The notes under the pieces were generated by a model. That model worked only from the letters and a program-made list of their open reading frames with translations, made no database searches and was not told the DNA's origin. From Macrostomum hystrix (lineage: Eukaryota > Animalia > Platyhelminthes): DNA of 64,000 nt. The stretch covers positions 1,302,001-1,366,000 of the forward strand of contig CATNEN010000005.1 in NCBI GenBank assembly GCA_950097015.1, given 5' to 3'. Positions 7,339 to 40,461 of the stretch are shown here, in pieces (position 1 is the stretch's first letter; each line of letters opens with the position of its first letter). Made by a program: the position numbers and the translations under genes.

Positions 7339-8615
7339 TTATATTACGCATCGACTCATTGGTACAATTTTACCAAGGCTTAAAATACCAGAGTTTGCAT
7401 TCTGATTCCTGTAGCTGAGGTGCAAGAACCTGTGCACCATGTACGACGTGTTCGGCAGCTGCTTCGTCTTGAAGCCGTCGGCTGCCAGCAGCCGGCAGTG
7501 TCGCAGCTGCAGCTCGGTGAGCTTGCGCGGGTTGGCGCAGTTGTACTTCTTCATCCTGCTCGGGGAGTACCAGTGGTCACACAGCGGCTGGAAGGCGTCC
7601 GCCTCGGCCAGCATGTTGCCGCACCAGTCTGCAGGTCTCTCACTCAGAGCCAGTGCGGTGTACTTGTCGTAGAATGACTGCAGCATCATGGGTCCTGTCA
7701 CGAAGACCGCATCGCTGGGAACTCTTTTAGTTTTCTTGGCCCAGTGCTGCTCAAACCAGGCAGGCCAGTGCTCAAGAACGAAGCTCAGGAAGCTGTGGTT
7801 CGCTCGACTCATCATCACCGCATTCGAAATCATCGAGCTGATGTTGAAGATGAAAGCGGCATGCTCGGGTGGCTCCTGGCTCCACACAGCTGACTGGCAG
7901 CTGAAGTTGGCTGACAGTCCGGCTCCCCGCAGTCCCGACGGTCTCAGCAGCGGCGAAGGGTCTCGGAGCAGCTCAACATCCGTGTCCACGTACAGGCCGC
8001 CGACATGATGCAGCACGACCAGACGACCGATGTCCGATCGCTCCAGTCCGTTGACCAGCTTGCTGTAGGTGCGGCTCAGCTTCGGGTAGTGCTTGGAGAT
8101 GAGCTCGGAGATCTGATTGTCGTCCCAGTGCATGAACTGCCACCGTTGCTGGGCATCGCTTTCGTTGCTGCTGCTGCTGCTGTCCAGCAATCGCTTCCAA
8201 GAGCGCACAATGGGGCTCAGCTTCTGATGCAAGCGGCCGTCTTTCGTAGTCCAGTGCACAATGGGCGGTATCGATTCAGGGAAGCGATTGTGCAGCGAGC
8301 TGCAAGGCAGTCCGTCCGTCAGTGGCTCAGCTTCCCAAGGCGAAATGTTTGCGGTGCCGCCTTCCAACTCCAGACTGTGTTGTGCCGTCTGGCGTCGGAC
8401 AGTCAGGTGTACCAGCTGGTAGGTTAAAGTTACCACCAGGATGATGAGCAGCAGTTTTTCTTGGATCTCTGAAAGTGAAAAATGCACAATTAGCAAGAAT
8501 TTAAACTTAGCACCGAAATCCTTTTATTTGCACCGGAGTCAGTATTCAAATCGTGTCGCTTGTTTAGATTGAACTCACTTGGAATGCAACGGCGCAAAAA
8601 TATTTTGCTGATCAT
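7339..8615 (-). CDS. GT32/DXD glycosyltransferase paralog 1 (type II membrane); exons 8615-8579 and 8468-7339
   Basis: IPPIVHWT...SW...WQFMHWDD...ERSDIGRLVVLHHVGGLYVDTDV (DxD)...SNAVMMS...TGP are Gly_transf_sug/OCH1-like motifs; a 37-nt ATG exon (MISKIFLRRCIP, donor gtgagt) splices in phase 1 to a tttcag acceptor; hydrophobic anchor LLLIILVVTLTY. Confidence 0.85.
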
Positions 8616-9726
8616 CTCGTCCGACAGAAAAAAACAAATGGCCTAATATTAATACTTTAATATTCAAATGGACTTCAATTTAATTACAATCGGGTTTAAG
8701 TTTTAGCAAATTCCACAGTTATGGTTGAGGTCCTGTTAGTTTTTCGTTGATAACGTCTCTTTCCTTTGTCTGTTAGAAAAAAATTGAATTAATATAACGA
8801 AGAGACTTGCCGCTATAATACTGTGTAAAATCACGTTATTTGAACCGTCAGAACAAAAGATATAATCAAAAGTAACACTACTTTTGGGACAGCCCTCGTA
8901 ATTAAGCTCTGAGTCTAGGATAAAAGTAACAAAAAATCCCGACTAAACCGAGTTAGGAGTTAGGAGTTCGAGTTTGGAGTTGATATGACTTTGCAAGATC
9001 TACGCTCGTATTTTATTGGCTGCAATTGTGCAGAGGACTGATTTCATATCAGCCTTCCGCCAAGCCTACCGCTTGGTCTGCTCTGTGCCAGAGGCTTCTA
9101 GAAATAACAACTGGACCCGCAAGGCACAGCGATGACTAATGTTTTCCCTGCAAGTTGAGGCCGGCATTTTTAGGGGCAGAGCAGAGTTGTTATTTCTAGA
9201 AGTCTCTGCTCTGTGCGTGTGGGGCTGGGGTGGGGGCTGCCTATTCTGGGTGCCACCTGCCCTCCCCACCTGCGTGCCGCTCCGTCGCTTGTGCGACAAG
9301 TGCCCCGGCCCCCCTGCAAATAGATAGATAGATTGTGCAGAGGGTCGAGCTTTGTGCATATTCGCGTATTTGATGAGTGATGACTATACTGTCTATGTAC
9401 GAGTGAGGGTGAGACCGTTTCAAACTGCAGGGGTCAATTCTCAATTGGTGTAGAGCATTAGCCTTCAGTATACCCAGGCATTGAAGATTAAACACGGGGT
9501 ATTAAGAAGACTTGCTAGCAGTTTTAAGCTAGTTTTCTTACCAGTCCAAAGCTTTTGCAGTGTCCAAGAAAAATGTGAAGATTTGACTTCTTCAGCTAAA
9601 CCTAAAGCTGAACACGTCACATAATCCCGCTAATCCAGAATCGGATTTTTTTCTAATATATCACCCTTCTTTGCTCCACTATGACAGAAATTCATTTTTT
9701 GTTTTTATATCGAAATTGGGGTCTAT

Positions 9727-10338
9727 GAAATTTGCTTGCCGAAGTTTGCTTGCCGAGCTTTGCTTGCGGAGGTCTTCTTGCCGAAGTTTGCTTGCCGAAG
9801 TTTGCTTGCCGAGCTTTGCTTGCGGAGGTCTTCTTGCCGAAGTTTGCTTGCCGAAGTTTGCTTGCCGAGCTTTGCTTGCGGAGGTCTTCTTGCCGAAGTT
9901 TGCTTGCCGAAGTTTGCTTGCCGAGCTTTGCTTGCGGAGGTCTTCTTGCCGAAGTTTGCTTGCCGAAGTTTGCTTGCCGAGCTTTGCTTGTGGTCTTCTT
10001 GACGAAGTTTGCTTGCGGATGTCTTCTTGCCGAAGTTTGCTTGCGGATGTCTTCTTGCCGAAGTTTTCTTGCGGATGTCTTCTTGCCGAAGTTTTCTTGC
10101 GGATGTCTTCTTGCCGAAGTTTTCTTGCGGATGTCTTCTTGCTAAAGTTTGCTTGCGGAGGTCTTCTTGCCGAAGTTTTCTTGCGGATGTCTTCTTGCCG
10201 AAGTTTGCTTGCGGATGTCTTCTTGCCGAAGTTTGCTTGCGGATGTCTTCTTGCCGAAGTTTGCTTGTGGAGGTCTTCTTGCCGAAGTTTGCTTGCGGAT
10301 GTCTTCTTGCCGAAGTTTGCTTGCCGAGCTTTGCTTGC
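9727..10338. repeat. 14-bp-subunit higher-order minisatellite (gaagtttgcttgcc / gagctttgcttgcg / gaggtcttcttgcc)
   Basis: Seen directly; explains the overlapping ORFs in several frames. Confidence 0.93.
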
Positions 10339-11087
10339 TGAACCTTAACTAAGCCTCTCGTTGTGCTCATATATATATTTGTAGTTAATACTCGTACATC
10401 TAGACGAATTCGTCTTGTAGTTAGCTCATAGCTCTGCCTGTTATTACCACCACTATCATATTCGCTAATCGCTATCGTGCTGAAATCAGGAACTGCTACA
10501 ATTTATGCTGCTATTATCCTTCTATTATACTAAATCCTTCGTGTACAAATCCCAAGGCTAGTTCGAAAGCTTACTGTGAGTGAGTTTAATGTGAGCTTAT
10601 AGGCTAACATTAGCTTAAAGCTTGCTGTGAGCTCGGTGGAAAATTGTACTGTCCCACCGAGGTACCTGAGCTCGAATCCGCGACGAAGCCGCATAAATTT
10701 GGGGCGCAGCCACGTTGAGAAGGCTTTAAAGCTTTTCGTGTAATTTGCGTCCATAATGAATAACCCCAAGGCACAGCGACAGTGCACACTGATTGACAAT
10801 GAGAAAATCAGTGGCTGGAAAAATGTACACATGTGTGAGTGTGTGCCTAGTTGAGCCACCGTGGTACTAGTTAGCTGCTTGGAAACTGCGTGGAAGCACA
10901 TATTTTAGCGGCATTCGACCTGCAGCCAGCGAGGAGGCAATTGTGTTATATCGCTGCTCCAGACACACAGATACGCTGCACAGGTGCGCACTCACACAAG
11001 TGTGTACATCTACCCTGACTTTCTCATCGTCAGGCAGTGTACAGTCTCACTGTGCCTTAGGGTTGGCCCAATTTAACGAAAAGCCTA

Positions 11088-13520: not shown

Positions 13521-14336
13521 TTAAACACGGCAATTTAAAATAGGCAGAATGGTGAAAATGCTCTCCTTCACCAGCATATTATGCGTGTAGCTTAAGTGCA
13601 TGAAGTGGTGCACAGTGTACGAACTGTTTGGCAGCTGCTTTGTCTCAAACTTTGTGCCAGCCAACCGTCTGCAGTGCAACTGCTGCAATAGTGACAGCTT
13701 TTGTGGATTATGGCACACTTTCTTAAGTTTGCTAGGTACGTTCGCAATGTCCCACAGCGGCTGGAAGGCGTCCGCCTCGGCCAGCATGTTGCCGCACCAG
13801 TCCGCAGGCCTCTCGCTGGGCGCCAGTGCGGTGTACTTGTCGTAGAATGACTGCAGCATCACGGGTCCTGTCACGAACACTGCATCATTGTGAACTCTTC
13901 CAGTTTTCTTGGCCCAGTGCTGCTCAAACCAGGGAGGCCAGTGCTCAAGAACGAAGCTGAGGAAGCTGTGGTTCGCTCGACTCATCATCAACGCATTCGA
14001 AACCAAAAAAGGCAAATTAAATGGAAAAGCGGCTTGCTCCAATGGTTCCTGGCTCCACACGGCTTCCTGGCAGCTGAAGTTTGCTGACAGTCCGGCTCCC
14101 CGCAGTCCCGACGGTCTCAGCAGCGGCGAAGGGTCTCGGAGCAGCTCAACATCCGTGTCCACGTACAGTCCGCCGACGTGATGCAGCACGACCAGACGAC
14201 CGATGTCCGATCGCTCCAGCCCGTTGACCAGCTTGCTGTAGGTGCGGCTCAGCTTCGGGTAGTGCTTGGAGATGAGCTCGGAGATCTGATTGTCGTCCCA
14301 GTGCATGAAGTGCCACCGTTGCTGGGCATTGCTTTC

Positions 14337-14380
<44 letters not shown>

Positions 14381-14872
14381 CCAGCAATCGCTTCCAAGAG
14401 CGCACAATGGGGCTCAGCTTCTGATGCAAGCGGCCGTCTTTCGTAGTCCAGTGCACAATGGGCGGTATCGATTCAGGGAAGCGATTGTGCAGCGAGCTGC
14501 AAGGCAGTCCGTCCGTCAGTGGCTCAGCTTCCCAAGGCGAAATGGTTGCGGTGCCGCCTTCCAACTCCAGACTGTGCTGTGCCGTCTGGCGTCGGACAGT
14601 CCGGTGTACCAGCTTGTAGGCTAAAGTTATTACCAGGATGATCAGCAGAAATGCTCGGCATTCTGAAAGTGATAACATATGTATGTGACCACGTACACTC
14701 GTTTTTGTAATTTATATTGTTTATTTTGGAAGTCTTGTCTGTAATAACTTTGGCATTGGCAGATTGTTAATTATCCGTCGTTCTGGTGGTAATTATAAGC
14801 TCGAATATATCGTGAATGGAATCTGTATTGATTAGGAATAGACTCACTTATAGAGTGCACGCGTGGCAGCAT
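13521..14872 (-). CDS. GT32/DXD glycosyltransferase paralog 2; exons 14872-14848 and 14662-13521
   Basis: Same motifs as paralog 1; a 25-nt ATG exon (MLPRVHSI, donor gtgagt) splices in phase 1 to tttcag; TM FLLIILVITLAY; poly-Ser encoded by an agc repeat. Confidence 0.85.
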
Positions 14873-18533: not shown

Positions 18534-18695
18534 AACTCTAGGCAACCAACCTACCCGGCACGCGCCCCAGTCGCGGCCGCGGAGCGGGTTGGATGTCAGC
18601 GACATCAGTCTCGTTTTTGTTCTTTCACTCAGCTCTTCTTCTGCCTGGCCATCCTCCTGATGCGTGCGGGGGACGTGGAAGTCAACCCTGGCCCC
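18528..18695 (+). CDS. Leader peptide ending in a 2A-like StopGo motif (…LFFCLAILLMRAGDVEVNPGP)
   Basis: ATG at 18528; gac gtg gaa gtc aac cct ggc ccc at 18672-18695; one extra C in the following C-run would fuse it to the PHD-APE frame. Confidence 0.8.
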
Positions 18696-21458
18696 CCCCA
18701 CCGGTAGGCTGTAGACGGTCATTCAGGAGCGACATCGTGCCTCTCAAGTGCGCGGTGGAAAATTGCGCGCACTCCTGCCATAAGCAGGAGTCGTGCAGTG
18801 GCTTTCGCCGGTACCAGGACCATGGCACCTGGCGCTGTCAAGATCACCTGGCAGCAGGGGCAAGGGCGGATCGCCCGACGCCTGCCAACGCCGACAGAGA
18901 GCGACGGCCTGGGGACCCGGCGGTCTGCCGCACCTGTGCTAGGGCCATCCGCCAAGGCACGCTCCCCCTCAAATGCGACCAAGATAATTGCGACGCCTGG
19001 TGTCATCGGACCATCGGACCATCATCCCGCGCTACAGGGGGTGCCCGCGCTGGCTGTGCCCCGAGCATGGCAGCCTCCCTGGTCGGACGCCCCACTGGTG
19101 CCAACCAGAACGGCAATCGCCAAGGCTCCCCGGCCGCGCCACGCTGCTGTGGTGGATGCGGCCGTCGGGTGGCGACCAACATCAACCCGATTCACTGCAG
19201 CACGTGCCAGGCTGCGTATCACAAGTCCTGCTCTGGTCTCCCGCGCAAGGCCGCCGAGTTTGCGCTGGCCCGCCAAGCCTGGCAGTGCGGCAAGTGCGTT
19301 ATGGGGCCTGGCCAAGACACTGAGCCTGCGGCGGACGAGATGGCGCCCTGTATCCGCCTCTCCACCACTGGCCGTATCAGCGCCCTCAACATTCTGCAGT
19401 GGAACGCTGACGGGCTCCTCGCCAAGGTACCGGAGCTGCTCGACCGCATCAACACGTGCAGGGCTGATGTAGTGGCGATTCAGGAAACCAAGCTGCGCTC
19501 TCAAGATATTGCGCCTCGTTTCCCGGGATATGCTGTTGTCCGGGCGGACCGTACCGAGGCGGATGGAGGTGGAGGCCTGCTCACGCTGGTGCACGAGCGT
19601 CTGGCCTTTAAGCAGGTCCCTTCCAAGCTTGCCAGCGCGATCGAGATGCTGCGGGTGCGAATTTACCTGGGCCCCAAGAAGACCCTGGACCTGGACAATT
19701 TGTACGCCCCGCCAAACCGCAATGGTGGAGAGGATGCGGACGCTCTCTGGCAGACTATCCCGGCGGGGGCTGACGTCATCTGCGGCGACTTCAACGCTCA
19801 TGCTCTCCCCTCTGGGACACTGAGCAGCCCACGGATGCTAGAGGGGACGCTCTCATGGACTGGGCCACTGGCCGGGCGCTCGCGGTGCTCAACGACGGCG
19901 ACCCGACCAGGGTCAATCGCGGTACCGGTGGCCTCAGCTCCCCCGATGTCACGCTGTGCCGTGCAGACTGGCACGACAAGGCTGAATGGAGCGTGCAGGA
20001 CGACCTTGGCTCGGATCACCTCCCTATCTTTGTCCGGCTCCGCTGCGCCGCCGCCACTATCGCCCGACGCGCTTGGCGCAAGAACGGAGTCAACTGGCAA
20101 GCTTTCACGGAGGATGCCGAGAATCAGGTGGCTGACTTCAGGAGCTCGGGGGTCTCTCTGACACAGCGGGTGCAGCGCCTGACCAAGGCTATCATCGACG
20201 CCGCATATCGTCATGTTGGGAAAACGACCTACAAACGCCCAGCGCGGCCCTGGCTGTCACATCAGGCGCGTGCAGCCATCCGCCGCCGCAATCGCCTCCG
20301 CCGGTTGGTTGGCAGTCACCGAGACGAATGGTTACAGGCGTCTGCGGAAGCGGCGCTCCTCATTAAAGAAGGCAAAGAACGATGCGGGCAGGATTTTCTC
20401 GCGGATGCGGACTTGACGCCCCCAAGGCTTGGCGGCTCATCAGGAGCCTCAGCGGGACACCCGATGACAACCAAGCTAACGAAGCTCTGGTGCACCAGGG
20501 CAAGGTCCTCTGCGATAACCGCGCCAAGGCGGAGCTATTTGCTAAGCACTACGCAGCGGTCAACCGGCTGACGTTCAGCAAGGCCGATCGTGAGCTCAAC
20601 CGTAGTGCCAAGGAGCCCACACGCAACTGTGGCGGCGACGATGACAGCTGCAGCGACATCACCATGGTGGAACTTGAGGCGGCCATTGAACACCAGCGGG
20701 CTAATGGAGCCTGCGGCCCGGACGACATCTCGCTACGCTTCCTCAAGGCCCTTGGACCTTTGGCAAGGCGCGAGCTGCTGGAAATCTTCAACCGTTCCTT
20801 CAAGACTGGGCAATGTGTGCAAGCCTGGAGGAGGGCGACCATCATCCCACTCCACAAACGTGGCAAACGAGTGAGTGACATGGCATCCTTTCGCCCAGTC
20901 AGCCTGACCTCTTGCATGGTAAAGCTCATGGAGCGCATCATCACCGCTCGGTTGTACTACATGGTCGAATCCCGGGGCTGGCTGGCTCCGCAGCAGGCAG
21001 GCTTTCGGCGATTCCACAGTTGCGAAGATCAGGTGCTCAACGTGGTGCAGGGCATCAGCGATGGATTCCAAAGCTCCCCGATGCTGCACTCCGTCATGGC
21101 TTTCTTGGACTACAGCAAGGCCTATGACAAACTCTGGCGTGAGAGGCTGCTGATCACTTTGATTGAGAAGGGCGTCCCAGGCACCTACGTCCGCGGGATT
21201 CATTCCTTCCTGCAGAATCGCGAGGCCAGGGTGTGCCTCCAAGGCGAGGTCAGTCGGTTCCACAGGCTGCGCCAGGGGCTACCACAGGCTCAGTGATCGC
21301 CCCCCTCCTCTTCATCCTGTTCCTCGATCCGGTCGTGCAGACCATCCCACCAGAGGTTCGTGTCTCCTTGTACGCCGACGACATTGCCGTGCGCAGCCAG
21401 CACCACTCTAAAATCACGGCGGCGGCCCAGGTTCAGGAAGCCGTCACCCGCATTGCGA
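18692..21458 (+). pseudogene. LINE polyprotein: PHD-like fingers, APE endonuclease, reverse transcriptase (several frameshifts)
   Basis: CxxC...HCSTCQAAYHKSC...WQCGKC; LNILQWNADG...IQETK...GDFNAH...GSDHLPI; GPDDI...FRPVSLTSCMVKLMERII...QQAGFRR...FLDYSKAYD...GLPQ/GSVIAP...YADD, split over ORFs 18593, 19855, 20382 and 21233. Confidence 0.9.
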
Positions 21459-21486
21459 ACCTTTTTGCCCGGCGGGCACTTAATCC

Positions 21487-26360: not shown

Positions 26361-27463
26361 CCACTTTCCCCTCTACTCTTCTTACTATATATCGATCCTT
26401 TAAGCGCTACGCTATTATTTGTTGTAGGGTTCTTTCTTTTGTAGTAAATTTCATTTCGCCCACTGCAATATGCTTATAATTATTAATCAATCAATTACTT
26501 TCTGTATTATATTTTACCAATCAGCTTTCGCCTTGATAACCAAATCACTGACACAAACACAGTAAATTAAACGAAACACGTTTTAAACTGCATACTGGTT
26601 CAAATTCCGACTTGCGGACCGTTGGTTTTCGGAAAGTAAAAGCAAATAAATAAATACTATAGATAGAGTGGGTTGGCATGATGAAAAGCAACATTTACAG
26701 CGCATTTAAACAAATAGAAAATCTCCGCTTCTTTTATTGCGTTTCTAAGAAAATAACATTCGGAAACAATTTGTCGGTCACAAAGATATTCGCTATTAAT
26801 TCAGTTGAATACAACAAAAAATTGCCCAATTATATATCCAACATCCAAAAGAGAAGCATATATCATACTGGGCCTCCATAACAAGCCGCCCAGAATCCAT
26901 TGTTTCCAAACTATTTATGCTAAACTGCAGTGCAGGGATTTGTCCTGCAAAAGCAATTGAAAAGCACACAGTGCAGATTTCGTGGCCCAGTTCAATACCT
27001 ACTGGAGGCATAGAACAGAGAACTCGAGCCAACTGAGTCACTTCTGAGCCTATTCATATAAACAATATTATTCAGCCGATAAATATCTACAAAAAATCTG
27101 CAATCCAGAGTTGGGACGTACTCTTAGAGATCTCCTCTTTTAGACTAGGAAACCAAAAATTGCGATCTGTAAGACAGATAATTCCATATGAGAATATGGA
27201 ATTGTGCAGTAGGAGCCAAATAGAAGTTGACAAGGAGTTCCAATTCTTATTGAAGTTTAGTTGGAATAAGGTATGGCCTGCCCATTCAAATTTTGAAAAG
27301 AAAATCTCAGAAAAGACTCCTGATTTCGTGTATTAACCCAGAAGATAAATCAAACTATACTTCATGGCACAAGACCACGGAGAAACCACTGAAGCCCTAG
27401 CAAAGAATATTGTAGAGATATCCATAATAAGACAACAGCTGCCCCGAGGCTTCATGCAAGAAA
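26361..27463 (+). repeat. 1.1-kb direct duplication, copy 1
   Basis: Nearly identical to 32573-33720. Confidence 0.93.
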
Positions 27464-27971
27464 GGCTAATTGTGTCAAGTTTCGTCTGGACCACAAACGA
27501 TTGCGTCGACGGAAATTGTGAAATATGTAAATTTTTGCGCGCCTTTCGGGCATCGAAACAGGAATGCAACATATTGCTTATCTGCAATTAGTTTATGGTC
27601 AAGCCGCCCCCATCTTTGGATTCCCAACGGGTTATATTCATGGAGGAAAGAGTTCTATTCTTTACTCCATGGTTATATTTTGATTTTAAGAAGAACCCAG
27701 AAAACACGCGGTCTACAACTAGACCATGCACTGGCTAAGCGTGTCTACTATGTAGACTAAAAGAAACTGCCAGGAGAAGCCAATTCTGGAATGTCATCAC
27801 AGATTGACATTCTCCTTCAATAGAAACTGACGAGCGGTTTGTGGAAAAGCAAATGGACGAGCGTCAGGTGGAGCAACCATCAAATTGTTGTTAAAGTTTT
27901 ACCAGATATCAATTATCTGCACGTTTTTTATTATCAGCACGCTTTTTTAATAGATTGACTATAGGATTTTA

Positions 27972-28304: not shown

Positions 28305-28399
28305 ACATATAACCAAGTGTGCGTAATTGAAATTGAAATTGAAATTGACTTCAACACTCATAATACAAACAAATAGTAAGTTAATATGTAAAGCAGTAT

Positions 28400-29788
28400 C
28401 TAAATACTGCAGGAAATGATCGGCAAGATAGAGGAAATTCTACAGGAACCAACCATGTCCATCTTTTTGTAGCTCAAATGCATGTACTTGTGCAAAGCGT
28501 ACGAGCTATTAGGGACTTGCTTCTCTTGAAACATTTTCATATTAATTGTGCCGCAGTGCCTCTTTTGCAGCTCCGACAGCTTTGAAGGCTCCGCGCAAGC
28601 CTTGGCTATAATATAAGGCAGATTCGCAACGTCCCACAGCGGCTGGAAGGCGTCCGCCTCGGCCAGGATGTTGCCGCACCAGTCTGCAGGTCTCTCGCTG
28701 GGCGCCAGTGCGGTGTACTTGTCGTAGAATGACTGCAGCATCACGGGTCCTGTCACGAACACTGCGTCATTGTGAACTCTTCCAGTTTTCTTGGCCCAGT
28801 GCTGCTCAAACCAGGGAGGCCAGTGCTCAAGAACGAAGCTGAGGAAGCTGTGGTTCGCTCGACTCATCATCACAGCATTGGACAGAAGTGTCTGCCGGTT
28901 GAAGGGAAAAGCTGCATGCTCTGGCAACTCCTGGCTCCACACGGCTGACTGGCAGCTGAAGTTGGCTGACAGTCCGGCTCCCCGCAGTCCCGACGGTCTC
29001 AGCAGCGGCGAAGGGTCTCGGAGCAGCTCAACATCCGTGTCCACGTACAGGCCGCCGACATGATGCAGCACGACCAGACGACCGATGTCCGATCGCTCCA
29101 GCCCGTTGACCAGCTTGCTGTAGGTGCGGCTCAGCTTCGGGTAGTGCTTGGAGATGAGCTCGGAGATCTGATTGTCGTCCCAGTGCATGAAGTGCCATCT
29201 GTCTGGCCGCAGGTGAACGGCAGCGCTAGCATCTGCGTTGCTGCTGGCTTGTTGAGTCTCGCCAGGAACGGATATTAATCGGACATCTGAGGGTTGCGTG
29301 AATCAACGCATTTTGTAGTGCAGTTAGTCACACTGATTAATTCACTCTATAATTATTTTTATTATTTTTAAAGTCCGTTCTATCTACACAATACTAGTAT
29401 CTATAGAATTTTTGGTCCCATGAGTGTCTCTAATGGCTTAATATTTATTAAAACTGCTTCAGCTATTTTCCAGTCCCACAACCAGCATCCATACCTGGAG
29501 GATTAGTGCTAGCGTCAGTATAGCCGCTGATATTGACGTGAAGCAGAAGTGTCCAAGTTTGAACTAGTTTAACGAGTTTAGAGTGTATTTTACCATCCTT
29601 GCTAGTCCAATGCACAATTGGCGGTATTGAGTCTAATGACATTAAGTCACTCAATATGTTGGCGCATGGCAGCTTGGTAGATTCTTCTATCTTCAATTTG
29701 TTATATTGCAGATTGTTGCTTAGCAAGTTTAATATAAAACAAGAAGTGCAGGACACGGCCAGTAATAGCAGAATTTTATTTTTTAAAC
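28400..29788 (-). CDS. GT32/DXD glycosyltransferase paralog 3; exons 29788-29495 and 29286-28400; ATG exon not located
   Basis: Upstream exon carries a TM (KILLLLAVSCTSCFILNLL) and IPPIVHWTSKDG; donor CCAG|gtatgg and acceptor cctcag join in phase 1 to the core exon. Confidence 0.78.
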
Positions 29789-32572
29789 CTGTATTGTTTT
29801 AATGAGAAATGGTTTGTTAGGTTAATTATGTAATGGAAGCATGTACAGATGTACTAGTTCATAGTTTACATATAATTAAGAATCATGGTGGCCACATGAA
29901 ATTCCCAAAACTGAATGCAGTTATCTAGAGGTAGCCAAGGTGTGGGGCAGACACAAGTTCAATGCCATAATTTCTGCATTGGACTGCATCAGCCATCATT
30001 GTTTTTTACTTACAGACAAACAGACATTTGTGACACCATCAATCCAGCCCATCAGCTTTTAAGTGGCGCATCAGTGTGCCAGTTGAGCCAACCTTACTAT
30101 TGATGAAGACACTCAAAATGAGCCATTGGCTACTTTGCTCTAGACACAAGCAACCCCCATATGCAACAGAGCTGACAAAGTTTCTGAGCTCATGCCACTG
30201 TCATTAAAGAAGGCAGAGTTTATTGCCTTTCCAGTGACTTTCGCGCATGTGGTATAGTCAACCAGTGTGTCATCAAATGCAAGACTATAAGTGTTCAACA
30301 GGAAGCTTCTGATTAAATACACTTAACATTTGATTCCTTGGTATTGCTACAGCAGGTTCTAGAAGCTGCATAAGAACTACAGCTGAGTCCAATTGACACC
30401 AATTATGGCCCAAGATAATCATTTAAATCATTATTATTCAGGCAAGTAAAGCAAGAGAATATTTTCTAAATTATTTACTAAGGTAGGCCCCTACCTCTAA
30501 ATATTTGGGATATCTCAAATTGAAAAGCATAGAATATATATCTGTGATGTTAATTTCTCACTTAATTTAATTTATAAGCTTATTTATTTATAAAATTGTT
30601 CAGCAGAGCCAAAAAATGGTGTAGTGAATTGCTAGGTGTATTTACTAGGTAAGCTAGTAAACGTTGAAAACAAACTTATGAAATCTCTTGCTAAAAGCTT
30701 TCGACATTGTGAAGTTTTGAGCTTTTGAAGTTTCAACCTAGTGAAGGTAGGCCTAGCTACTATTTTAGTTTTTGACGTTGTGAAGTTTAGACCTTGTGAA
30801 AATTCGAGCTTATGCAGTCCCTTGCTTGAGTTTTTGATTTTATGAAGTTTCAATCTAGTGAAGTTTTGACCTAGTGAAGGTAGCAGCTATTTTAGTTTTT
30901 GATGTTGTGAAATTTCAACCTTGTGAACTTTTGACCTTGTGAAGAAATGTGCTTTTGACATTGTGAAATTTCAAGTTTGTGAAACCCCCCATCTTACAGT
31001 AGCCTAACATTTATGTCACTTAGCTAAGCCCTATCCTTTGTTAAATAATAGTTGAATAGGCCTAATCCTATAGTCATAAGCTTGAACTAGCTAGCTTCAA
31101 AATTAGTGTCCTAAACTTAATTTATAAGCTTATTTATTAAAAAAATGTATTACAGAGCCAAAAAATAATGGTGTAGTGAATTGCTTGGTGTATTTACTAG
31201 GTATGCATATGGTGGCTACTCCTTGTGAAGATATAAATAGGCCTAGGGCCTAGTTAATAAAATAACTGCATTACTTGTGCTGTAATGTATACAATAAGTA
31301 TAGTGTTTACTGTTTGCTAAATTTGTCTGTTTTGTTAGTTTTTAACTGACAAAAGGTCCAGTTAGCTAAGTGAGTTCAAATTTATGTCCACCAACTTCTG
31401 TCTTACCTACTGTGGAACGAAAACACTTGTGGAATGCTGAAATTCTGAAATGCATGTTTCCTTGGATTATGGTAGCATAAAGTGGCAGTGTCGCAAGCAG
31501 GGTGCATTAACTAGAAGCAAGACAGGACAGCAGATACAAATTGTGAATACTGTAGACGTAAGTTAATGACGAAATTAAATTAAATTAAATTGAATGCCGA
31601 GTCAAGAGGCGTAGCGGTCTTGAACGTGTAGCGGTTAATAACTAGCAGGATTTTACTTGTATAAATTATGTACCATTGCCAGCAGCCCTGCTGCAATCAT
31701 TATTATTATTATTTGTATTATTTTTATGACTCATGACTTATGACTTATGAATTCATGACTCTTAATATTAGATCAGAAAGTAGGCTGGCTAAGGAGAGCG
31801 CTGAAGCGGCACCGAACCAGAAAGTTACCATTTAACCCGATTTAAAATAATAGGAAACGCAGTTTCTAAATATGATGTATTAAAACAAAATAAATAACCC
31901 ATAAAGGGAACCACACTAAGCGACACCGTCACAGGTTTCCCGAGCGATATTCTGATTGATATTCAAAGATTAACAACAGCACACTTCATAGTCATCGAAT
32001 CTACTCAAAACTCAATAAATAACTTTTCACCCATTAGAACTGCAACGCAGAAAAATTTTATGCAGTTCTCTCGTGGATTTAGAACACAATTATCAATAAA
32101 TTGATGCTCGCCTATCTCCACAATTTATTTTAAAATATCCTTATTTTGGGTACTTTCACTCGACCAAATTAGCTGAAAATTGACTGGAAGCAATTATTCA
32201 CCCAGCCACCACAAAAATGAGATTGCAAAAGAAATCAGCACGATTGGATGATCCAGAGAGGCGGCCAAACGCAACAACAGTTTCAAGAATTTTTAGGCCA
32301 CCTATAGCACATCGCTACCATCAAATGGACCCTACCGGAAACATGCTGGGGTAATTTTTATGGATGGCCCAAACGATCGAGATCCATCATCGCGACATGC
32401 AGAATTACGACACGAATCCTACCCCCGTATACACCATTTCTAAACCCGACCGAATTTGCTAACCCTGCGTTTAAGTAAGATCTCAAGTCAACGTCAAAGA
32501 ATAGTTGAGGATGAAGTTTTATATTATTATGCTTCAATTTTTGACTTGATTGAAAAATCTGATCTATATATA

Positions 32573-33720
32573 CCACTTTCCCCTCTATACTCTTCTTACT
32601 ATATATCGATCCTTTAAGCGCTACGCTAATATTTGTTGTAGGGTTCTTTCTTTTATGGTAAATTTCATTTCGCCCACTGCAATACGCTTATAATTATTAA
32701 TCAATCAATTACTTTCTGTATTATATTTTACCAATCAGCTTTCGCCTTGATAACCAAATCACTGACACAAACACAGTAAATTAAACGAAACACGTTTTAA
32801 ACTGCATACTGGTTCAAATTCCCACTTGCCGACCGTTGGTTTTCGGAAAGTAAAAGCAAATAAATAATACTAGATAGAGTGGGTTGGCATGATGAAAAAC
32901 AACATTTACAGCGCATTTAAACAAATAGAAAATCTCCGCTTCTTTTATTGCGTTTCTAAGAAAATAACATTCGGAAACAATTTGTCGGTCACAAAGATAT
33001 TCGCTATTAATTCAGTTGAATACAACAAAAAATTGCCCTATTATATATCCAACATCCAAAAGAGAAGCATATATCATACTGGGCCTCCATAACAAGCCGC
33101 CCAGAATCCATTGTTTCCAAACTATTAGGGGATTCAACATACAACAATGCAGTTGCAAAGCCAAAATTTATGCTAAACTGCAGTGCAGGGATTTGTCCTG
33201 CAAAAGCAATTGAAAAGCATACAGTGCAGATTTCGTGGCCCAGTTCAATACCTACTGCATGGAGGCATAGAACAGAGAACTCGAGCCAACTGAGTCACTT
33301 CTGAGCCTATTCATATAAACAATATTATTCAGCCGATAAATATCTACAAGAAATCTGCAATCCAGAGTTGGGACGTACTCTTAGAGATCTCCTCTTTTAG
33401 ACTAGGAAACCAAAAATTGCGATCTGTAAGACAGACAATTCCATATGAGAATATGGAATTGTGCAGTAGGAGCCAAATAGAAGTTGACAAGGAGTTCCAA
33501 TTCTTATTGAAGTTTAGTTGGAATAAGGTATGGCCTGCCCATTCAAATTTTGAAAAGAAAATCTCAGAAAAGACTCCTGATTTCGTGTATTAACCCAGAA
33601 GATAAATCAAACTATACTTCATGGCACAAGACCACGGAGAAACCACTGAAGCCCTAGCAAAGAATATTGTAGAGATATCCATAATAAGACAACAGCTGCC
33701 CCGAGGCTTCATGCAAGAAA
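32573..33720 (+). repeat. 1.1-kb direct duplication, copy 2
   Basis: Matches 26361-27463 with an extra segment of about 40 bp near 33125-33170. Confidence 0.93.
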
Positions 33721-34239
33721 CTCGTATTGCCAATATATACGCTCGCATTAAAAAAGTTGCTGATTTCTCTCCTCACAATTTATTCAAACAAACATGATAC
33801 TCATACTGTCGATATCATTTATACTAGTGTTAAGATACTGTGCATGATATATCGTAGCTGTTCCAATTAAAAGCATTGACCAACTACGAGTAATTAGTTG
33901 ATCTCTGCACACACACGCGTCAAAAAAAAATATTCCGATTTGTACATTCTTCCGGAAATCAATCGACACAACGCTAAACTAAACAAAGTTTTCTTTCCGT
34001 TACGTGCCAATGTGAAAATATATTCTGCTGCTTAAAATTCTGCCTGTCTTTGGTGAGTTTGTCATACCTGACAAAACCATGACTGGAAACTTGACAGACA
34101 GATACCAGAATGCAGATATATAGATATGCCGTTGGACAAAACGAATCGGCAATTCAACTACCAAACATCTATTTGAAGCGATCAATGGGGTCACAGAAAT
34201 ATTTGCAACAACACATAATTATACGTAGCTGTGCGTATC

Positions 34240-35414
34240 CTACAATTTGCATGTTAAAATAGGCAATATTGTTTGAATTTGTGATGAACCATACATCAGC
34301 ATACCCTTGTAGCTCAGGTGCATGTACTTATGCACAGTGTAAGAACTCTTGGGAATCTTCTTTGTTTGAAACATCGAGAACTTCATGCCCTGGCAGAGAC
34401 CTCTCTGCAGTGCAGAAAGCTTCAGGGGCTTTGAGCAGGCCTTCTTCATGTTGGTGGGAAAATAAACCATGTCCCACAGCGGCTGGAAGGCGTCCGCCTC
34501 GGCCAGCATGTTGCCGCACCAGTCTGCAGATCTCTCGCTGGGCGCCAGTGCGGTGTACTTGTCGTAGAATGACTGCAGCATCACGGGTCCTGTCACGAAC
34601 ACTGCGTCATTGTGAACTCTTTTAGTTTTCTTGGCCCAGTGCTGCTCAAACCAGGGAGGCCAGTGCTCAAGAACGAAGCTGAGGAAGCTGTGGTTCGCTC
34701 GACTCATCATCACAGCATTGGACAGAAGTGTCTGCCGGTTGAAGGGAAAAGCTGCATGCTCGGATTGCTCCTGGCTCCACACGGCTGACTGGCAGCTGAA
34801 GTTGGCTGACAGTCCGGCTCCCCGCAGTCCCGACGGTCTCAGCAGCGGCGAAGGGTCTCGGAGCAGCTCAACATCCGTGTCCACGTACAGGCCGCCGACA
34901 TGATGCAGCACGACCAGACGACCGATGTCCGATCGCTCCAGTCCGTTGACCAGCTTGCTGTAGGTGCGGCTCAGCTTCGGGTAGTGCTTGGAGATGAGCT
35001 CGGAGATCTGATTGTCGTCCCAGTGCATGAACTGCCACCTATCCCGGTGGAAGCCGTCGCTGTTTGTGTTGTTTAGCACTGCGCGGCTCCTGTTGAACCT
35101 GACCTCTAGCAGCAATCTCCAAGACCGTACTATCGGAATCAGCTGTGATGCCATCCGCCCATCCTTGCTAGTCCAGTGCACAATTGGTGTTATTGAGTCC
35201 ACGAACATTTTTTGGAATGAGGAACATACTGCTGGTCGATAGTCAGCTTTAGAGATGTTAATCCTTAGTACTCCTGGTCGATAGTCAGCTTTAGAAATGT
35301 TAATCTTCAGTACTCCTGGTCGATAGTCAGCTTTAGAAATGTTAATCTTCAGTATTCCGTTGACCAGATAAAGCAATGTAGCGAAGAGCGCGATTGAAAA
35401 GATATGTTTGAATA
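34240..35414 (-). CDS. GT32/DXD glycosyltransferase paralog 4 (main exon); ATG exon not located
   Basis: Phase-1 acceptor tttcag at 35415-35417; TM HIFSIALFATLLYLV; three 42-bp stem repeats; full core motifs. Confidence 0.82.
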
Positions 35415-36894
35415 CTGAAACTTGCAGGATGTATAGTTAAATATTATAAAGGAAAGCCTGAAGAAGGATTTGAGATTATGTGATTTATCCAAGGACTTCT
35501 AGATAATAGCATCTATGCTATATAATGCTATTTTGCTACTATATAGATTCTATTGTATAGAAGTCCTTGGGTTTATCGAATTCGGTTCGACTAAGGTTTT
35601 AACTGTTGTTCTAGTGTATTGCCAAGTCGGCCCTAGTTGTCCTTGTGTAATGCATGTATAAAAACCGCATACAAGTAAATGATGCATATATAGAAGCTGC
35701 AAGTTGGTGTGACGTTAATATGGCACAAATATGACATTCGTACCTTTTAAAAAGCGAAAACGTTCTAGCAATGGCCAGCAGATTTCCGTTTTGATGAAAT
35801 TTAATATTATCATTTAAGCTGCAGATTCAGGTGAGGTTATCCTCTGGGCTTAATTTAACAGTAGATACTAATTGTATACCTCAAGCTGCACTTCACTCTG
35901 CTGGATTATACAATTTTGGCTTTAGAGAGGTGAGAGACTGTATATAGTGTATAAAATATAATCTTCTTAGCTTTAGAAATGATGGCTAAGTATTCGGCTG
36001 AATATTTTTATATTTAAATGCACATCGAATGATAGTGGTGTTGTGTGCACAATAAACAGTGGAAGAAGAAAGGCATTTTTGTTAACTCTAAATATAGGTA
36101 CGAAATTATAATGTACATATACTGCATAGCGCAATAAAATACAGAGACTGTGTGTATAAGTATTTCGGGTTGCGAGCATGGCGCATGTTATATTTGGCTA
36201 TATCGGTAGCCACTCATGTGAATTAATTCATGTCGCTTGGAGGGGGGATGGTAGCGTATGTTGTGACAAGCCTCGGCCAGCGGGCTAATTCAATCGAGAG
36301 ACAACTGGGGGGTGCTCTGGTCGGTTCTGCTGGCTGCTATCGAATCTATTTGAGCTTTTCCATTGCCTGTTGCTGCATAATTTTCTAGAGGCAACAGGGT
36401 AGGGCGTGCGACTCATTATTTGTCCAGACCTCTGCATCGGATTGAGTGGAAAATTTCTGCCTGCAGTGAGTCACGCCTAATGCTCCTCACAAAGCATTGG
36501 AGGCATGTAGTGAAGACGCGTGATTGGCGCGTAAGTGATAGTGTTGCAGGGCTATTCTATAATATTTAATATCCCACCGTTGCCACCAAAGTTGTTATAG
36601 GCCTCTTTTATTATTTCTCACTTAACTCAAAATTCCAATAATACCAATCCCACTGCTTGTACCAACAAAGTTGTTGCAGGTGGAAATTAACTATCCCACA
36701 AATGCCACCAAAGTTGTACCAGGCGTGCTTAAACAATACTGGCTCAATCGAATAGATATTTAACTGGCGGTCCTTAAATGGGCCGTTTTAGCTTCTCAAT
36801 TATGGTAGCGTATATGTTTGCACGAGCGGTAATTAGGCAACTGTATGCGTTTCCAGTCAATTAGGCGTCCCCGAGATCAGAGTTTAGCAGTTTC

Positions 36895-37509: not shown

Positions 37510-37548
37510 AACGACGCGTTTCGCACAGAATCGTGCATCTTCAGGTTT
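37510..37548 (-). ncRNA. Minimal type I hammerhead ribozyme (Penelope pLTR), minus copy
   Basis: Exact reverse complement of 38778-38816. Confidence 0.75.
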
Positions 37549-37746
37549 ATTAAAACGAACAGAGCAAGTAGAAAAGCGAATAAATATGTGATTCTTTGGG
37601 TGTAACATTAATCAATATTTTTTAATCAATAATTAAAATATTTCTCGAGTACATATTTGACACTCCGTAAGTCAAGAGGCAAGTCCAGGGGCGGATTGTT
37701 AGCATTGCAGCCAGCAGTGCAGAAAGTACAGCCAGTGCCCCCTCCC

Positions 37747-38082
37747 TCAGAACACACGGAGAACATGGCCCGCGCCACTGTGTTGGAGTTGGGTGTTGAG
37801 GTTGGGGGAATGAGCTTTAATGTACAACGCTTCAAGTATCTGCAGTTTGGAGTCAAATGAGCATTGGTCAATGACTTGGAAGCGCTCTTCGGGTTTGCAG
37901 CTGGAGCAGCTATTACATTCTAAGAGATGGTTTTGAATAGCCGACGGTTTCAGCCAGTGCTCCCTGATTCTAGTGTGCAGGTGCCTTTTAGTCTTCCCCA
38001 CGTAGGAGACGCTCTGGTCATCAGAGCAGTTGAATTGGTAAACAACACCAGCACGAAGAGCACAGGGAACACGTGACTTCAA
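37747..38082 (-). pseudogene. GIY-YIG endonuclease domain of Penelope (RT C-terminal remnant at 38105-38341)
   Basis: GVVYQFNC...SYVGKTKRHLHTRIREH...ILEALYIK...PNLN. Confidence 0.9.
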
Positions 38083-38777
38083 CCGACCGACAAAGTTGCC
38101 AACTTTAGCAGAACGAAAGATGAGTCACGCGGATCTCGCAATTAAGGAAGTTGCGAAATAATTTGCAGATTCTAATTTTTGAAGAATTGAGAAGGATAGC
38201 CAAAGAAAGGGAGGACAAGAATTGGTTCGTTGAGGTCAATGAGATCAGTTTAGCGCTAGGCTGATTGGCAATTTTCTCAGAGACGAATTTATGAATGTGA
38301 GTGTGGATAAACGCACGAGGGTAACCATTTTGTTGAAACATTTCAACTGCACACTAGAATCAGGGAGCACTGGCTGAAACCGTCGGCTATTCAAAACCAT
38401 CTCTTAGAATGTAATAGCTGCTCCAGCTGCAAACCCGAAGAGCGCTTCAAAGTCATTGACCAATGCTCATTTGACTCCAAACTGCAGATACTTGAAGCGT
38501 TGTACATTAAAGCTCATTCCCCCAACGTCAACACTCAACTCCAACACAGTGGCGCGGGCCATGTTCTCCGTGTGTTCTGAGGGAGGGGGCACTGGCTGTA
38601 CTTTCTGCACTGCTGGCTGCAATGCTAACAATCCGCCCCTGGACTTGCCTCTTGACTTACGGAGTGTCAAATATGTACTCGAGAAATATTTAAATTATTG
38701 ATTAAAAATATTGATTAATGTTACACCCAAAGAATCACATATTTATTCGCTTTTCTACTTGCTCTGTTCGTTTTAAT

Positions 38778-38816
38778 AAACCTGAAGATGCACGATTCTG
38801 TGCGAAACGCGTCGTT
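38778..38816 (+). ncRNA. Minimal type I hammerhead ribozyme (Penelope pLTR), plus copy
   Basis: aac-CTGAAGA-t-gcac gattct gtgc-GAAA-cgc-GTC-gtt; palindromic stem III acgcgt; predicted cut after C38813. Confidence 0.75.
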
Positions 38817-39367
38817 AAACGTTAAATGTTGAGTCTCGCCTTTTTATTCATCTTGTTTGCCAAGCGAGCAACTTTACCTGAGTAAAACATTTATTTGTAA
38901 CTGGTTGTTGTGGAAATTGTTCATTTATTAACTTTTGCATTTTTTACAGATACATGTAAAAAGTCTCTTTATTATCTTCGCTACCTATCTCAAAAGAATT
39001 TACTGATTGGATCAATTTTTCTTAATTAAAAGCGTAATGGCAAGACTCATTTCGGCAACGGTTAGACCAAAAGAAAGTTAATTTTAGTTCAAATCATAAT
39101 TTGAAATAAGCTGACTTTATGACAGAATATATTTAATAATGTAACTTGACGCTCTTTAGCTTTTGTTGTTATTGAAGCAAATAAAGTAAAAAATCAAAGA
39201 AGAGACAAAGAAATCATATTTTCAAGTGACTATAGAGTTGCTTCACAATTTTTCAATATGTCGTCAAAAAGGGCACCGTTATTAAAAAACCATCCACAAA
39301 AACTGTGGTGACAATTGCTGTTCCGAAGCACTTTTGACATGTACTCCATTGCGCAATGCAAATTGAT

Positions 39368-40461
39368 TTACATCGTACATTTTAGAATAGGAAGAATAGA
39401 AGAGATTTTCGAAGCGCCGAACATGCGCATGTTGTTCGTGTAGCTTAGGTGAAGAAACTTGTGCACAGTGTACGAGCCTTTTGGAATTTGCTTTGCTTTG
39501 AATTTCTCATCTGAAAGCCTCTTGCAATGCTGCTTTTGTAGTTCGGATAGCTTTCGAGAATTGCTGCACATGCTTCTCATCCTACTGGGTCCATAGTAGG
39601 AGTCCCTCAGGGGCTGGAAGGCGTCCGCCTCGGCCAGCATGTTGCCGCACCAGTCCGCTGGCCTGTCGCTCGGCTGCAGCGCGGTGTACTTTTCGTAAAA
39701 GGACTGAAGCATGATGGGTCCCGTGACGTAAACGGCTTCATAGAAGCTTCTGTGACGACTTTTGACCCACCTGTTCTCAAACCAGGCCGGCCATTGCTCA
39801 AGAACGTAGCTCAGGAAGCTGTGGTTCGCTCGACTCATCATCACCGCATTCGAAATCATCGAGCTGATGTTGAAGATGAAGGCGGCATGCTCGGGTGGCT
39901 CCTGGCTCCACACGGCTTCCTGACAGCTGAAGTTAGATGACAGTCCGGCTCCCCGCAGTCCCGACGGTCTCAGCAGCGGCGAAGGGTCTCGGAGCAGCTC
40001 AACATCCGTGTCCACGTACAGTCCGCCGACGTGATGCAGCACGACCAGACGACCGATGTCCGATCGCTCCAGTCCGTTGTCCAGCTTGCTGTAGGTGCGG
40101 CTCAGCTTCGGGTAGTGCTTGGAGATGAGCTCGGAGATCTGATTGTCGTCCCAGTGCATGAACTGCCACCTATCCAGGTGGAAGCCGTCGCTGTTTGTGT
40201 TGTTTAGCACTGCGCGGCTCCTGTTGAACCGAACGCTCATTAGCTGTCTCCAGGATTTCAGAATTGATGTCTGTCTCATAGAAAGCCGGTTATCCTTGCT
40301 AGTCCAGTGTACGATGGGTGGTATGGACTCCGGGAATAACGCCGCCAGCGAGCTGCAGGGTGGCGCGTTGGCTGCTTCGAACAGCGACCAAATCGAACAG
40401 CGGAGAAGAAACAGCAGCGCAGAAGCCAGCAGGAGTACGATTAGAGGTTTTCGCCTCAGGG
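39368..40461 (-). CDS. GT32/DXD glycosyltransferase paralog 5 (main exon); ATG exon not located
   Basis: Frame stays open upstream of the listed ORF through LRRKPLIVLLLASALLFLL (TM) to a phase-1 acceptor ttttcag at 40462-40468; full core motifs. Confidence 0.82.

What the first reader, a model, noticed from the sequence alone, without database searches (positions are those of the whole stretch)
7339..40461. Five-gene GT32 glycosyltransferase array with a homogenised catalytic core and freely diverging flanks
Seen: five minus-strand paralogs. Long stretches are identical at the nucleotide level in all five, including third codon positions: cagcttgctgtaggtgcgg...cccagtgcatgaa, the DxD segment gacagtccggctcccc...gtccacgtacag, and the FQPL island ggctggaaggcgtccgcctcggccag. 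Identity ends abruptly after FQPL. The last ~80 aa keep only the Cys spacing and HxF/YxHLSY, and the TM/stem regions of paralogs 3, 4 and 5 differ. The core is GC-rich and the tails more AT-rich. Known: GT32 (OCH1/SUR1/A4GalT-like) enzymes are Golgi type II retaining glycosyltransferases. Inference: recurrent gene conversion keeps the donor-binding core constant while acceptor-side regions diversify. This could generate variable surface, mucus or glycolipid glycans, making it the best candidate here for an undescribed system.
Basis: partly seen in the sequence, partly recalled or inferred. Interest (0 to 1): 0.78.

Follow-up and report, generated by a model that had tools for sequence, protein, structure and literature searches.

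The report
Gene-converted core in flatworm glycosyltransferase array
Five neighbouring glycosyltransferase genes of the flatworm Macrostomum hystrix keep a 564-base catalytic core almost identical by copying it among themselves, while their much older C-terminal parts stay different; this is a clear new example of a well-known evolutionary process, not a new kind of system.

Summary
Five minus-strand PF04488/GT32 genes lie at 7339-40468. A 564-nt core (RWxFMHWDD to AFQPL) is 87-98% identical between copies, with synonymous distance (dS) 0.04-0.34. The next 77-80 codons, up to the stop, are saturated (pS 0.63-0.87). The switch happens within about 5 nt in every pair (Fisher p 1e-8 to 1e-24).

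Gene conversion is well supported:
- Nothing outside the core is shared by all five copies.
- Sites inside the core show incompatible splits.
- Other paralogs in the same genome (L006; the tandem pair L008/L009) have core pS 0.6-0.74, so synonymous sites are free to change.
- Core trees group genes by species (M. hystrix versus M. lignano), while tail trees group across species. AU tests reject the opposite topologies (p 0.003 and 0.001).

A second array of seven genes on the same contig is homogenised everywhere except a 36-codon patch right after FQP.

The structure model matches GT32 Och1 (Z 17.2). It places that patch in a two-cysteine helix hairpin just before a conserved histidine.

The idea that the variable part sets acceptor specificity is plausible but untested. 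Positive selection was not shown.

Verdict: a new member of a known kind (region-limited concerted evolution), of moderate interest.

The parts
7339..8523 (-). Paralog c1, an open frame with no in-frame ATG before the TM segment. Tail 7339-7581, core 7582-8145, stem and TM 8146-8523.
13521..14678 (-). Paralog c2, a complete ATG-to-stop ORF of 385 aa. Tail 13521-13754, core 13755-14318, stem and TM 14319-14678.
28400..29286 (-). Paralog c3, exon 2. Tail 28400-28636, core 28637-29200.
29287..29494 (-). Predicted 208-nt GT..AG phase-1 intron, found only in c3, about 85 nt upstream of the core. It is predicted from sequence alone, without RNA evidence.
29495..29798 (-). Paralog c3, exon 1 (open frame). 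It encodes a hydrophobic segment and the SIPPIVHWTSKDG motif.
34240..35436 (-). Paralog c4, an open frame. Tail 34240-34476, core 34477-35040. A 14-aa tandem repeat lies in the upstream part of the frame.
39368..40468 (-). Paralog c5, an open frame. Tail 39368-39607, core 39608-40171. The TM segment is in frame but has no ATG.
26361..27472 (.). Second high-identity tract shared only by c3 and c4; its partner is 32573-33729. It is 98% identical in ungapped blocks. It lies 0.9 kb (c3) and 0.5 kb (c4) downstream of the stop codons. Its 3' half is an old dispersed repeat.
32573..33729 (.). Partner of the c3 downstream tract, located downstream of c4.
18593..23023 (+). Transposon insertions that widen the c2-c3 spacer. 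A LINE (endonuclease plus reverse transcriptase) is interrupted by a THAP/TNP-like transposase ORF. These are not part of the gene family.

Best explanation
These are five tandem type-II-membrane GT32 (GT-A fold, DxD) glycosyltransferase genes of Macrostomum hystrix. The duplicates are old, older than the split from the M. lignano lineage.

Their 564-nt catalytic core is kept 87-98% identical by repeated short (0.1-0.9 kb) non-crossover gene conversion between array members up to 32 kb apart. Tracts stop where homology ends, at the FQPL junction, so the C-terminal 77-80 codons remain ancient and distinct. In most copies the stem and TM region also remains distinct.

Shown: the step in synonymous divergence, mosaic tracts, conflict between core and tail trees, and free synonymous change in paralogs that were not converted.

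Inferred: the recombination mechanism, GC-biased conversion raising core GC3, and that selection for distinct substrate-side surfaces keeps the post-FQP hairpin from being overwritten.
For: Divergence step:
- Core dS is 0.04-0.34 and tail dS is 1.3 to incalculable, within one continuous ORF.
- The sliding profile shows pS 0.00-0.10 over the first 80 core codons, rising to 0.8 within 10-20 codons after FQPL.
- Fisher p is 2e-8 to 1e-24.

Tracts are internal:
- Only the core is shared among all five copies. Spacers and promoter-side DNA do not align.
- The c1-c2 identity begins about codon 11 of the coding sequence, not in the upstream DNA. This argues against unequal crossover or a recent whole-gene duplication.

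Mosaicism inside the core:
- Splits c1+c5|c2+c3+c4, c1+c3+c4|c2+c5, c1+c4+c5|c2+c3 and c1+c2+c5|c3+c4 are mutually incompatible.
- Neighbouring sites are more compatible than in all but 21 of 2000 permutations.
- Concordant runs for c1-c5, c2-c3 and c2-c4 were reached in 0 of 2000 permutations.

Controls within the same genome:
- L006 (contig C1), whose tail is the closest relative of c4's tail, has core pS 0.61-0.66 to every array copy.
- The tandem pair L008/L009 has core pS 0.74.
- So the core's synonymous sites are not intrinsically constrained.

Comparison across species:
- Core amino-acid identity is 84-96% within M. hystrix, 80-84% among M. lignano P0001-3 and 73-79% between the species.
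- Tail identity is 37-51% within the species. The best tail partners are c5-P0002 at 57%, c2-P0001 at 53% and c4-L006 at 60%.
- The core tree groups by species. The tail tree places c5 with P0002/P0004 (95/88) and c4 with L006 (95/82).
- AU tests reject a c1-c5 clade on tail data (p 0.0026) and a c5+P0002+P0004 clade on core data (p 0.0011).

Other support:
- GC3 of the most homogenised stretch is 0.81. It is 0.49-0.71 in five non-array paralogs (0.75 in a sixth, L019).
- Family and fold.
Against: - The cross-species test is therefore at protein level only.
- The AU groupings were chosen after the trees had been seen.
- With five sequences the breakpoint tests are simple home-made permutations, not GENECONV or GARD.
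- The assembly was built from PacBio reads and polished with short reads (PMC10468722). Polishing across paralogs could exaggerate the perfect-identity runs.
- Tail dS is saturated, so neither its age nor its selection regime can be quantified.
- No dN/dS above 1 was found anywhere.
Confidence: 0.86

Rival explanations
1. Recent whole-gene tandem duplication, followed by very fast divergence of the tail and flanks through local hypermutation or relaxed constraint.
For: The tail has lower GC, and its pN (0.29-0.42) is higher than the core's.
Against: - Tail synonymous sites are saturated while the core's are not.
- Spacers do not align.
- The tails of c5 and c4 have closer relatives in M. lignano and on another contig than within the array.
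- Tail pN/pS of about 0.4-0.5 indicates purifying selection, not decay.
- The mosaic inside the core needs exchange between copies.
Confidence: 0.03
2. Nucleotide-level purifying selection on the core, for example from an RNA structure, an antisense ORF or codon bias, keeps it identical without any exchange between copies.
For: - Core GC3 is high (0.74-0.78, and 0.9 in places).
- Plus-strand ORFs overlap the cores.
Against: - The same core in the non-array paralogs L006, L008 and L009 has pS 0.6-0.74.
- Paralogs share species-specific amino-acid states in each species.
- Incompatible site patterns require recombination.
Confidence: 0.03
3. Assembly or polishing artefact: reads from one paralog were used to correct the others, which created the shared core.
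For: - The assembly used noisy long reads plus Illumina polishing (PMC10468722).
- Perfectly identical runs are 82-84 nt long, shorter than a typical short read.
Against: - The cores still differ by 2-13%, in structured haplotype-like blocks.
- All five frames stay open.
- M. lignano proteins from an independent assembly show the same pattern of conserved core and diverged tail.
- Array 2 shows the same pattern with different boundaries.
- Polishing cannot turn saturated sequence into 90% or more identity over 564 nt.
Confidence: 0.05
4. Unequal crossing-over (birth and death with chimeric genes), rather than non-crossover conversion, produced the shared segments.
For: The genes form a same-strand tandem array with about 5-6 kb periodicity. 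c1 and c2 share the whole 5' two-thirds of the gene.
Against: Every shared tract is internal and flanked on both sides by unalignable DNA. A crossover would also leave one flank identical. Some crossover history cannot be excluded.
Confidence: 0.05

Closest known systems
Region-limited concerted evolution (interlocus gene conversion) in tandem gene arrays. Examples are the trypanosomatid UDP-glycosyltransferase families and T. brucei tandem arrays (PMC5853035, PMC1855330). From my own memory, the mammalian FUT1/FUT2/Sec1 genes are another case.
   Same: Paralogs cluster by species in part of the gene. Recombination breakpoints lie inside the coding sequence. Homogenised and non-homogenised segments sit side by side.
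   Different: This case is in a free-living flatworm GT32 family. The boundary is unusually sharp and common to all copies. The same small hairpin-coding patch is spared in two independent arrays.
Saccharomyces cerevisiae Och1 (GT32, PDB 9N3S; PMC12312940)
   Same: - GT-A fold, Z 17.2 over 224 residues.
- The profile hit covers the N-terminal sugar-binding region up to the DxD motif (E 1e-6).
- Type II membrane layout.
- A C-terminal conserved His: model residue about 357 aligns near Och1 H463.
   Different: - Only 16% identity.
- DTD rather than DMD at the DxD motif.
- A Cys-containing helix hairpin and a C-terminal Cys.
- Donor and acceptor are unknown.
Animal GT32 enzymes A4GALT and A4GNT (Pfam PF04488 plus PF04572)
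   Same: They share the PF04488 sugar-binding region. UniRef names two of the M. lignano homologues alpha-1,4-N-acetylglucosaminyltransferase.
   Different: No PF04572 (Gb3 synthase C-terminal) hit at E<=0.01 in any of the five copies. The A4GNT name appears to be an automatic label (my reading). Orthology was not tested further.
Variable-exon clusters with shared constant exons, such as UGT1 and GCNT2 (PMC1885805)
   Same: The functional logic is the same: one constant catalytic portion combined with several variable portions in a tandem cluster.
   Different: In those clusters the constant part is physically shared through splicing. Here each gene has its own copy, kept alike by conversion.

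Membership tests
CAZy GT32 / Pfam PF04488 (Gly_transf_sug) | Match to the PF04488 model above its gathering score | tested here: met
   All five copies score 46-50 bits against a cut-off of 23.
CAZy GT32 / Pfam PF04488 (Gly_transf_sug) | DxD motif following the SDxxR...GGxYxD context | tested here: met
   ERSDIGRLVVLHHVGGLYVDTDVE is identical in all five copies. D174 and D176 are invariant across 27 family members. The x position is Thr here and Leu in array 2. The Och1 paper describes a hydrophobic x as typical of retaining enzymes.
CAZy GT32 / Pfam PF04488 (Gly_transf_sug) | GT-A fold closest to a solved GT32 structure | tested here: met
   The AF2 model has mean pLDDT 75, with the core at 88-97. 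The best match is Och1 9n3s: Foldseek E 2e-8, VIA Z 17.2, rmsd 3.6 over 224 residues.
CAZy GT32 / Pfam PF04488 (Gly_transf_sug) | Type II membrane topology (N-terminal signal anchor) | tested here: inconclusive
   c2 has an ATG followed by a hydrophobic helix, modelled as a helix over residues 4-41. c1, c3, c4 and c5 have hydrophobic segments in frame but no ATG. No topology predictor was run.
CAZy GT32 / Pfam PF04488 (Gly_transf_sug) | Retaining transferase activity with a defined donor and acceptor | not testable with these tools
   This needs an enzyme assay.
A4GALT/A4GNT subfamily | C-terminal PF04572 (Gb3_synth) domain | tested here: not met
   Only PF04488 was reported at E<=0.01.
Concerted evolution by interlocus gene conversion | Synonymous divergence changes stepwise along the gene | tested here: met
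Concerted evolution by interlocus gene conversion | Segments give conflicting trees: the converted segment groups by species and the unconverted segment by orthology | tested here: met
   Protein trees and AU tests, p 0.0026 and 0.0011. Nucleotide data from the second species were unavailable.
Concerted evolution by interlocus gene conversion | Mosaic tracts (four-gamete violations, runs of concordant sites) | tested here: met
Concerted evolution by interlocus gene conversion | Tracts are internal, with flanks not shared (this excludes simple duplication or crossover) | tested here: met
Concerted evolution by interlocus gene conversion | Conversion events seen segregating in populations or pedigrees | not testable with these tools
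   This needs resequencing data.

The most novel reading that the evidence does not exclude
The family may use a two-part design. A catalytic scaffold is kept constant by conversion. A roughly 36-residue, two-cysteine helix hairpin immediately after the FQP strand is actively protected from conversion because it sets acceptor specificity. A mid-core loop patch with three haplotypes may play the same role. If so, each array would be a panel of enzymes with the same chemistry aimed at different glycan or protein acceptors.

The support is that the same patch is the only unhomogenised island in a second seven-gene array. In addition, c3 and c4 have converted tracts on both sides of their tails.
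Probability: 0.3. Interest if true: 0.62.

Novelty: new member of a known kind. Interest (0 to 1): 0.45.

Why it matters
This is an unusually clean natural example of gene conversion and functional divergence dividing up a single exon. The boundary falls at the same codon in all copies, and a second array in the same genome and a second species show the same pattern.

It points to one small structural element, the post-FQP helix hairpin, as the likely specificity determinant of an uncharacterised, apparently Macrostomum-expanded GT32 subfamily. That gives a concrete target for swap experiments.

It also carries a practical warning. Orthology calls and dN/dS scans on these genes in Macrostomum comparative work will be misleading unless the core and the tail are analysed separately.

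Tried and rejected
M. lignano array DNA could not be fetched, so no cross-species dS or nucleotide trees were made.
- A sequence search of the PDB with a single protein gave nothing useful. The family profile found Och1.
- Literature searches for Macrostomum plus GT32, and for the M. lignano gene identifiers, found nothing. A flatworm duplication preprint mentions other GT families but not GT32.
- Positive selection: pN/pS stays below 1 in the array-1 tail and the array-2 patch. With saturation, no claim can be made.
- Start codons: a spliced-leader AUG was considered for the four copies without an ATG. An in-frame AG after a pyrimidine run exists in c1, but none was found in c5, so the 5' ends remain unresolved.
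- The c3 exons were never joined for any search, and the spliced model is only described.
- The large representative-protein search was not run, because no claim here rests on the absence of relatives.
Full report
**Source of the window**

The window is G000:C5:1302001-1366000 of a genome with 220,453,370 bases in 42 contigs. These figures are exactly the total length and contig number published for the Macrostomum hystrix assembly (PMC10468722, Table 1). The nearest public proteins are M. lignano proteins at 53-67% identity. I therefore treat the organism as the free-living flatworm M. hystrix.

**The observation**

Five minus-strand open frames carry the Pfam domain PF04488 (GT32 sugar-binding region with DxD), at E 6e-13 to 7e-12:
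- c1: 7339-8523
- c2: 13521-14678
- c3: 28400-29286, plus an upstream exon at 29495-29798
- c4: 34240-35436
- c5: 39368-40468

A protein-guided codon alignment shows a 188-codon core, from RWxFMHWDD to AFQPL, that is 84-96% identical in protein. It is followed by a 77-80-codon tail at 37-51% identity.

At nucleotide level, runs of 82, 41, 84, 31 and 26 nt are identical in all five copies. The first 234 nt of the core have five variable sites.

**Divergence profile**

Nei-Gojobori estimates by segment:
- Core dS is 0.04 (c3-c4) to 0.34 (c3-c5).
- Tail pS is 0.63-0.87, which is saturated.
- In the stem, c1-c2 have dS 0, while all other pairs are saturated or close to it (c4-c5 dS 0.88).

A sliding window shows pS 0.00-0.10 over the first 80 core codons. 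There is a bump to 0.6 in a mid-core patch (QEPPEHAAFIFNISSMISNA). Values in the rest of the core are low to moderate (0.09-0.36). pS rises to 0.8 within 10-20 codons after FQPL. Third-position differences in core versus tail give Fisher p from 2e-8 to 1e-24 for all ten pairs.

**The shared tracts are internal**

A self-comparison of the window finds only the roughly 570-bp core shared by all five copies. Spacers, promoter-side DNA and the DNA just downstream of the stop codons do not align.

The c1-c2 identity starts near codon 11 of the coding sequence and runs to FQPL. c4 and c5 share about 60 nt more upstream of the core.

c3 and c4 share a second 1.1-kb tract (26361-27472 and 32573-33729, 98% identical in ungapped blocks). 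It lies 0.5-0.9 kb beyond their stop codons. The tail and the proximal 3' flank between the two tracts are unalignable or saturated. The 3' half of that tract is an old dispersed repeat, about 73% identical to many loci. The 98% identity is therefore specific to the c3-c4 pair.

Internal tracts bounded on both sides by non-homologous DNA fit non-crossover conversion. They do not fit a recent duplication or a simple unequal crossover.

**Mosaicism**

Within the core, 27 biallelic informative sites support four mutually incompatible splits: c1+c5|c2+c3+c4, c1+c3+c4|c2+c5, c1+c4+c5|c2+c3 and c1+c2+c5|c3+c4. Neighbouring sites are more compatible than in all but 21 of 2000 permutations. Runs of concordant polymorphic sites for c1-c5, c2-c3 and c2-c4 were reached in 0 of 2000 permutations.

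c1 and c5 are the most distant copies, 32 kb apart, yet they share the mid-core haplotype. These are simple home-made versions of the PHI and GENECONV tests, not the published programs.

**Controls in the same genome**

A six-frame search of the genome found further family members:
- a dispersed copy on contig C1 (L006)
- a tandem pair (L008, L009)
- a seven-gene array at C5:3266506-3300685 (L010-L016)
- several others

L006 has the tail closest to c4's (60% amino-acid identity; 95/82 support in the tail tree). Its core has pS 0.61-0.66 to every array copy, and 77% nucleotide identity against 87-98% inside the array. The tandem neighbours L008 and L009 have core pS 0.74. Synonymous sites of this core are therefore free to change, which excludes nucleotide-level constraint as the cause of the identity.

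**Cross-species test**

The M. lignano homologues P0001-P0003 share their own core states, such as DDK, YLVQSYRK and TPNFDCES. All five M. hystrix copies have DDN, KLSRTYSK and SANFSCQ at the same positions.

In the core tree, c1-c5 (with L006) form one group (89/97) and P0001-3 form another (88/81). In the tail tree, c5 joins P0002/P0004 (95/88) and c4 joins L006.

AU tests reject a c1-c5 clade on tail data (p 0.0026). They also reject a c5+P0002+P0004 clade on core data (p 0.0011). The groups were named after the trees had been seen, and the data are proteins only. Within those limits, the pattern is the classic signature of concerted evolution of the core over older tail lineages.

**A second array behaves the same way, with different boundaries**

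In the seven-gene array, pS is 0.02-0.36 through the stem, the core and the last 40 codons. It reaches 0.46-0.76 between haplotype groups in a 36-codon patch that begins right after FQP. Gene pairs with the same patch type (L012, L013, L014) have patch pS 0.00-0.09.

The same small region is thus the one island spared by homogenisation in an independent array. Patch pN/pS is about 0.5-0.7, higher than the 0.3 seen elsewhere but below 1. Positive selection is not demonstrated.

**GC content**

GC3 of the most homogenised core stretch is 0.81 in this array and 0.76-0.81 in array 2. It is 0.49-0.71 in five non-array paralogs and 0.75 in one other. This fits GC-biased conversion, but the sample is small.

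**What the proteins are**

The evidence for family and fold is:
- a PF04488 hit in every copy
- a family profile hit to yeast Och1, covering the N-terminal sugar-binding region up to the DxD motif, E 1e-6
- an AlphaFold2 model of c2, mean pLDDT 75 with the core at 88-97
- a best fold match to Och1, a GT32 enzyme: Foldseek E 2e-8, VIA Z 17.2, rmsd 3.6 Å over 224 residues, model residues 67-358 aligned to Och1 92-464

Next in the fold ranking come bacterial retaining GT-A enzymes of the clostridial-toxin type. That match reflects the shared fold only.

In the model, FQPL is a strand (305-308). It is followed by two helices (314-323 and 330-341) carrying the nearly invariant C322 and C336, and then by a strand (355-358) bearing the nearly invariant H357. 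The end of the alignment puts H357 beside Och1 H463, a residue the Och1 authors propose binds the donor. They propose S443-Q448 and M464 as acceptor contacts (PMC12312940).

The variable patch is therefore a helix hairpin packed just before a catalytic-site element. That is compatible with a role in acceptor choice, but it remains an inference. I could not measure distances, and hairpin pLDDT is only 60-77. No PF04572 domain was found, so membership of the A4GALT/A4GNT subfamily is not supported.

**Gene models**

c2 has its own ATG. c1, c3, c4 and c5 have hydrophobic anchor segments in frame but no ATG.

The Macrostomum spliced leader ends in ATG and is thought to supply start codons (PMC8629364, PMC10468722). 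c1 has an in-frame AG after a pyrimidine run, but c5 has none, so the 5' ends remain open.

c3 has a predicted 208-nt GT..AG phase-1 intron (29287-29494) that restores the frame between its stem exon and the core.

**Verdict**

The phenomenon belongs to a known kind, as seen in trypanosomatid glycosyltransferase arrays (PMC5853035, PMC1855330). The functional claims about acceptor diversification and surface or mucus glycans are untested.

The most interesting extension is that the same two-cysteine hairpin patch is spared from homogenisation in two arrays.

Noticed in passing
G000:C5:3266506-3300685 (loci L010-L016): A second tandem array of seven same-family genes on the plus strand. It is homogenised over stem, core and C-terminus (pS 0.02-0.36), except for a 36-codon patch right after FQP (pS 0.46-0.76 between patch types).
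   Followed up: partly
window 18593-23023 (+): A LINE (endonuclease PF03372 plus reverse transcriptase PF00078) is interrupted by an ORF with THAP and TNP-like RNase H domains, which looks like a P-element-like transposase. This insertion lengthens the c2-c3 spacer.
   Followed up: partly
window 23692-24711 (-): A 339-aa ATG ORF with no Pfam match lies between the transposons and c3. Its nature is unknown.
   Followed up: no
window 9671-10370, 11084-12103, 12455-13221, 4993-5502: Several minisatellite arrays lie in the c1-c2 spacer and upstream of it. The first one generates long spurious ORFs on both strands.
   Followed up: no
window 8466-8523, 29690-29798, 35346-35436, 40400-40468: Four of the five genes lack an in-frame ATG before the membrane anchor. 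A spliced-leader AUG could serve c1, but no in-frame acceptor was seen for c5.
   Followed up: partly
window 37480-37983 and 38344-38846: A 504-bp inverted repeat at 98.8% identity lies in the c4-c5 spacer.
   Followed up: no
window 35250-35376 (-): A 14-aa unit (LKINISKADYRPGV) is repeated three times in the upstream part of the c4 open frame. It may be a coding stem repeat or intronic sequence.
   Followed up: no
window 15966-16283 and 40958-41273: A 319-bp inverted match at 88% identity lies upstream of c2 and of c5. It may be a dispersed repeat.
   Followed up: no
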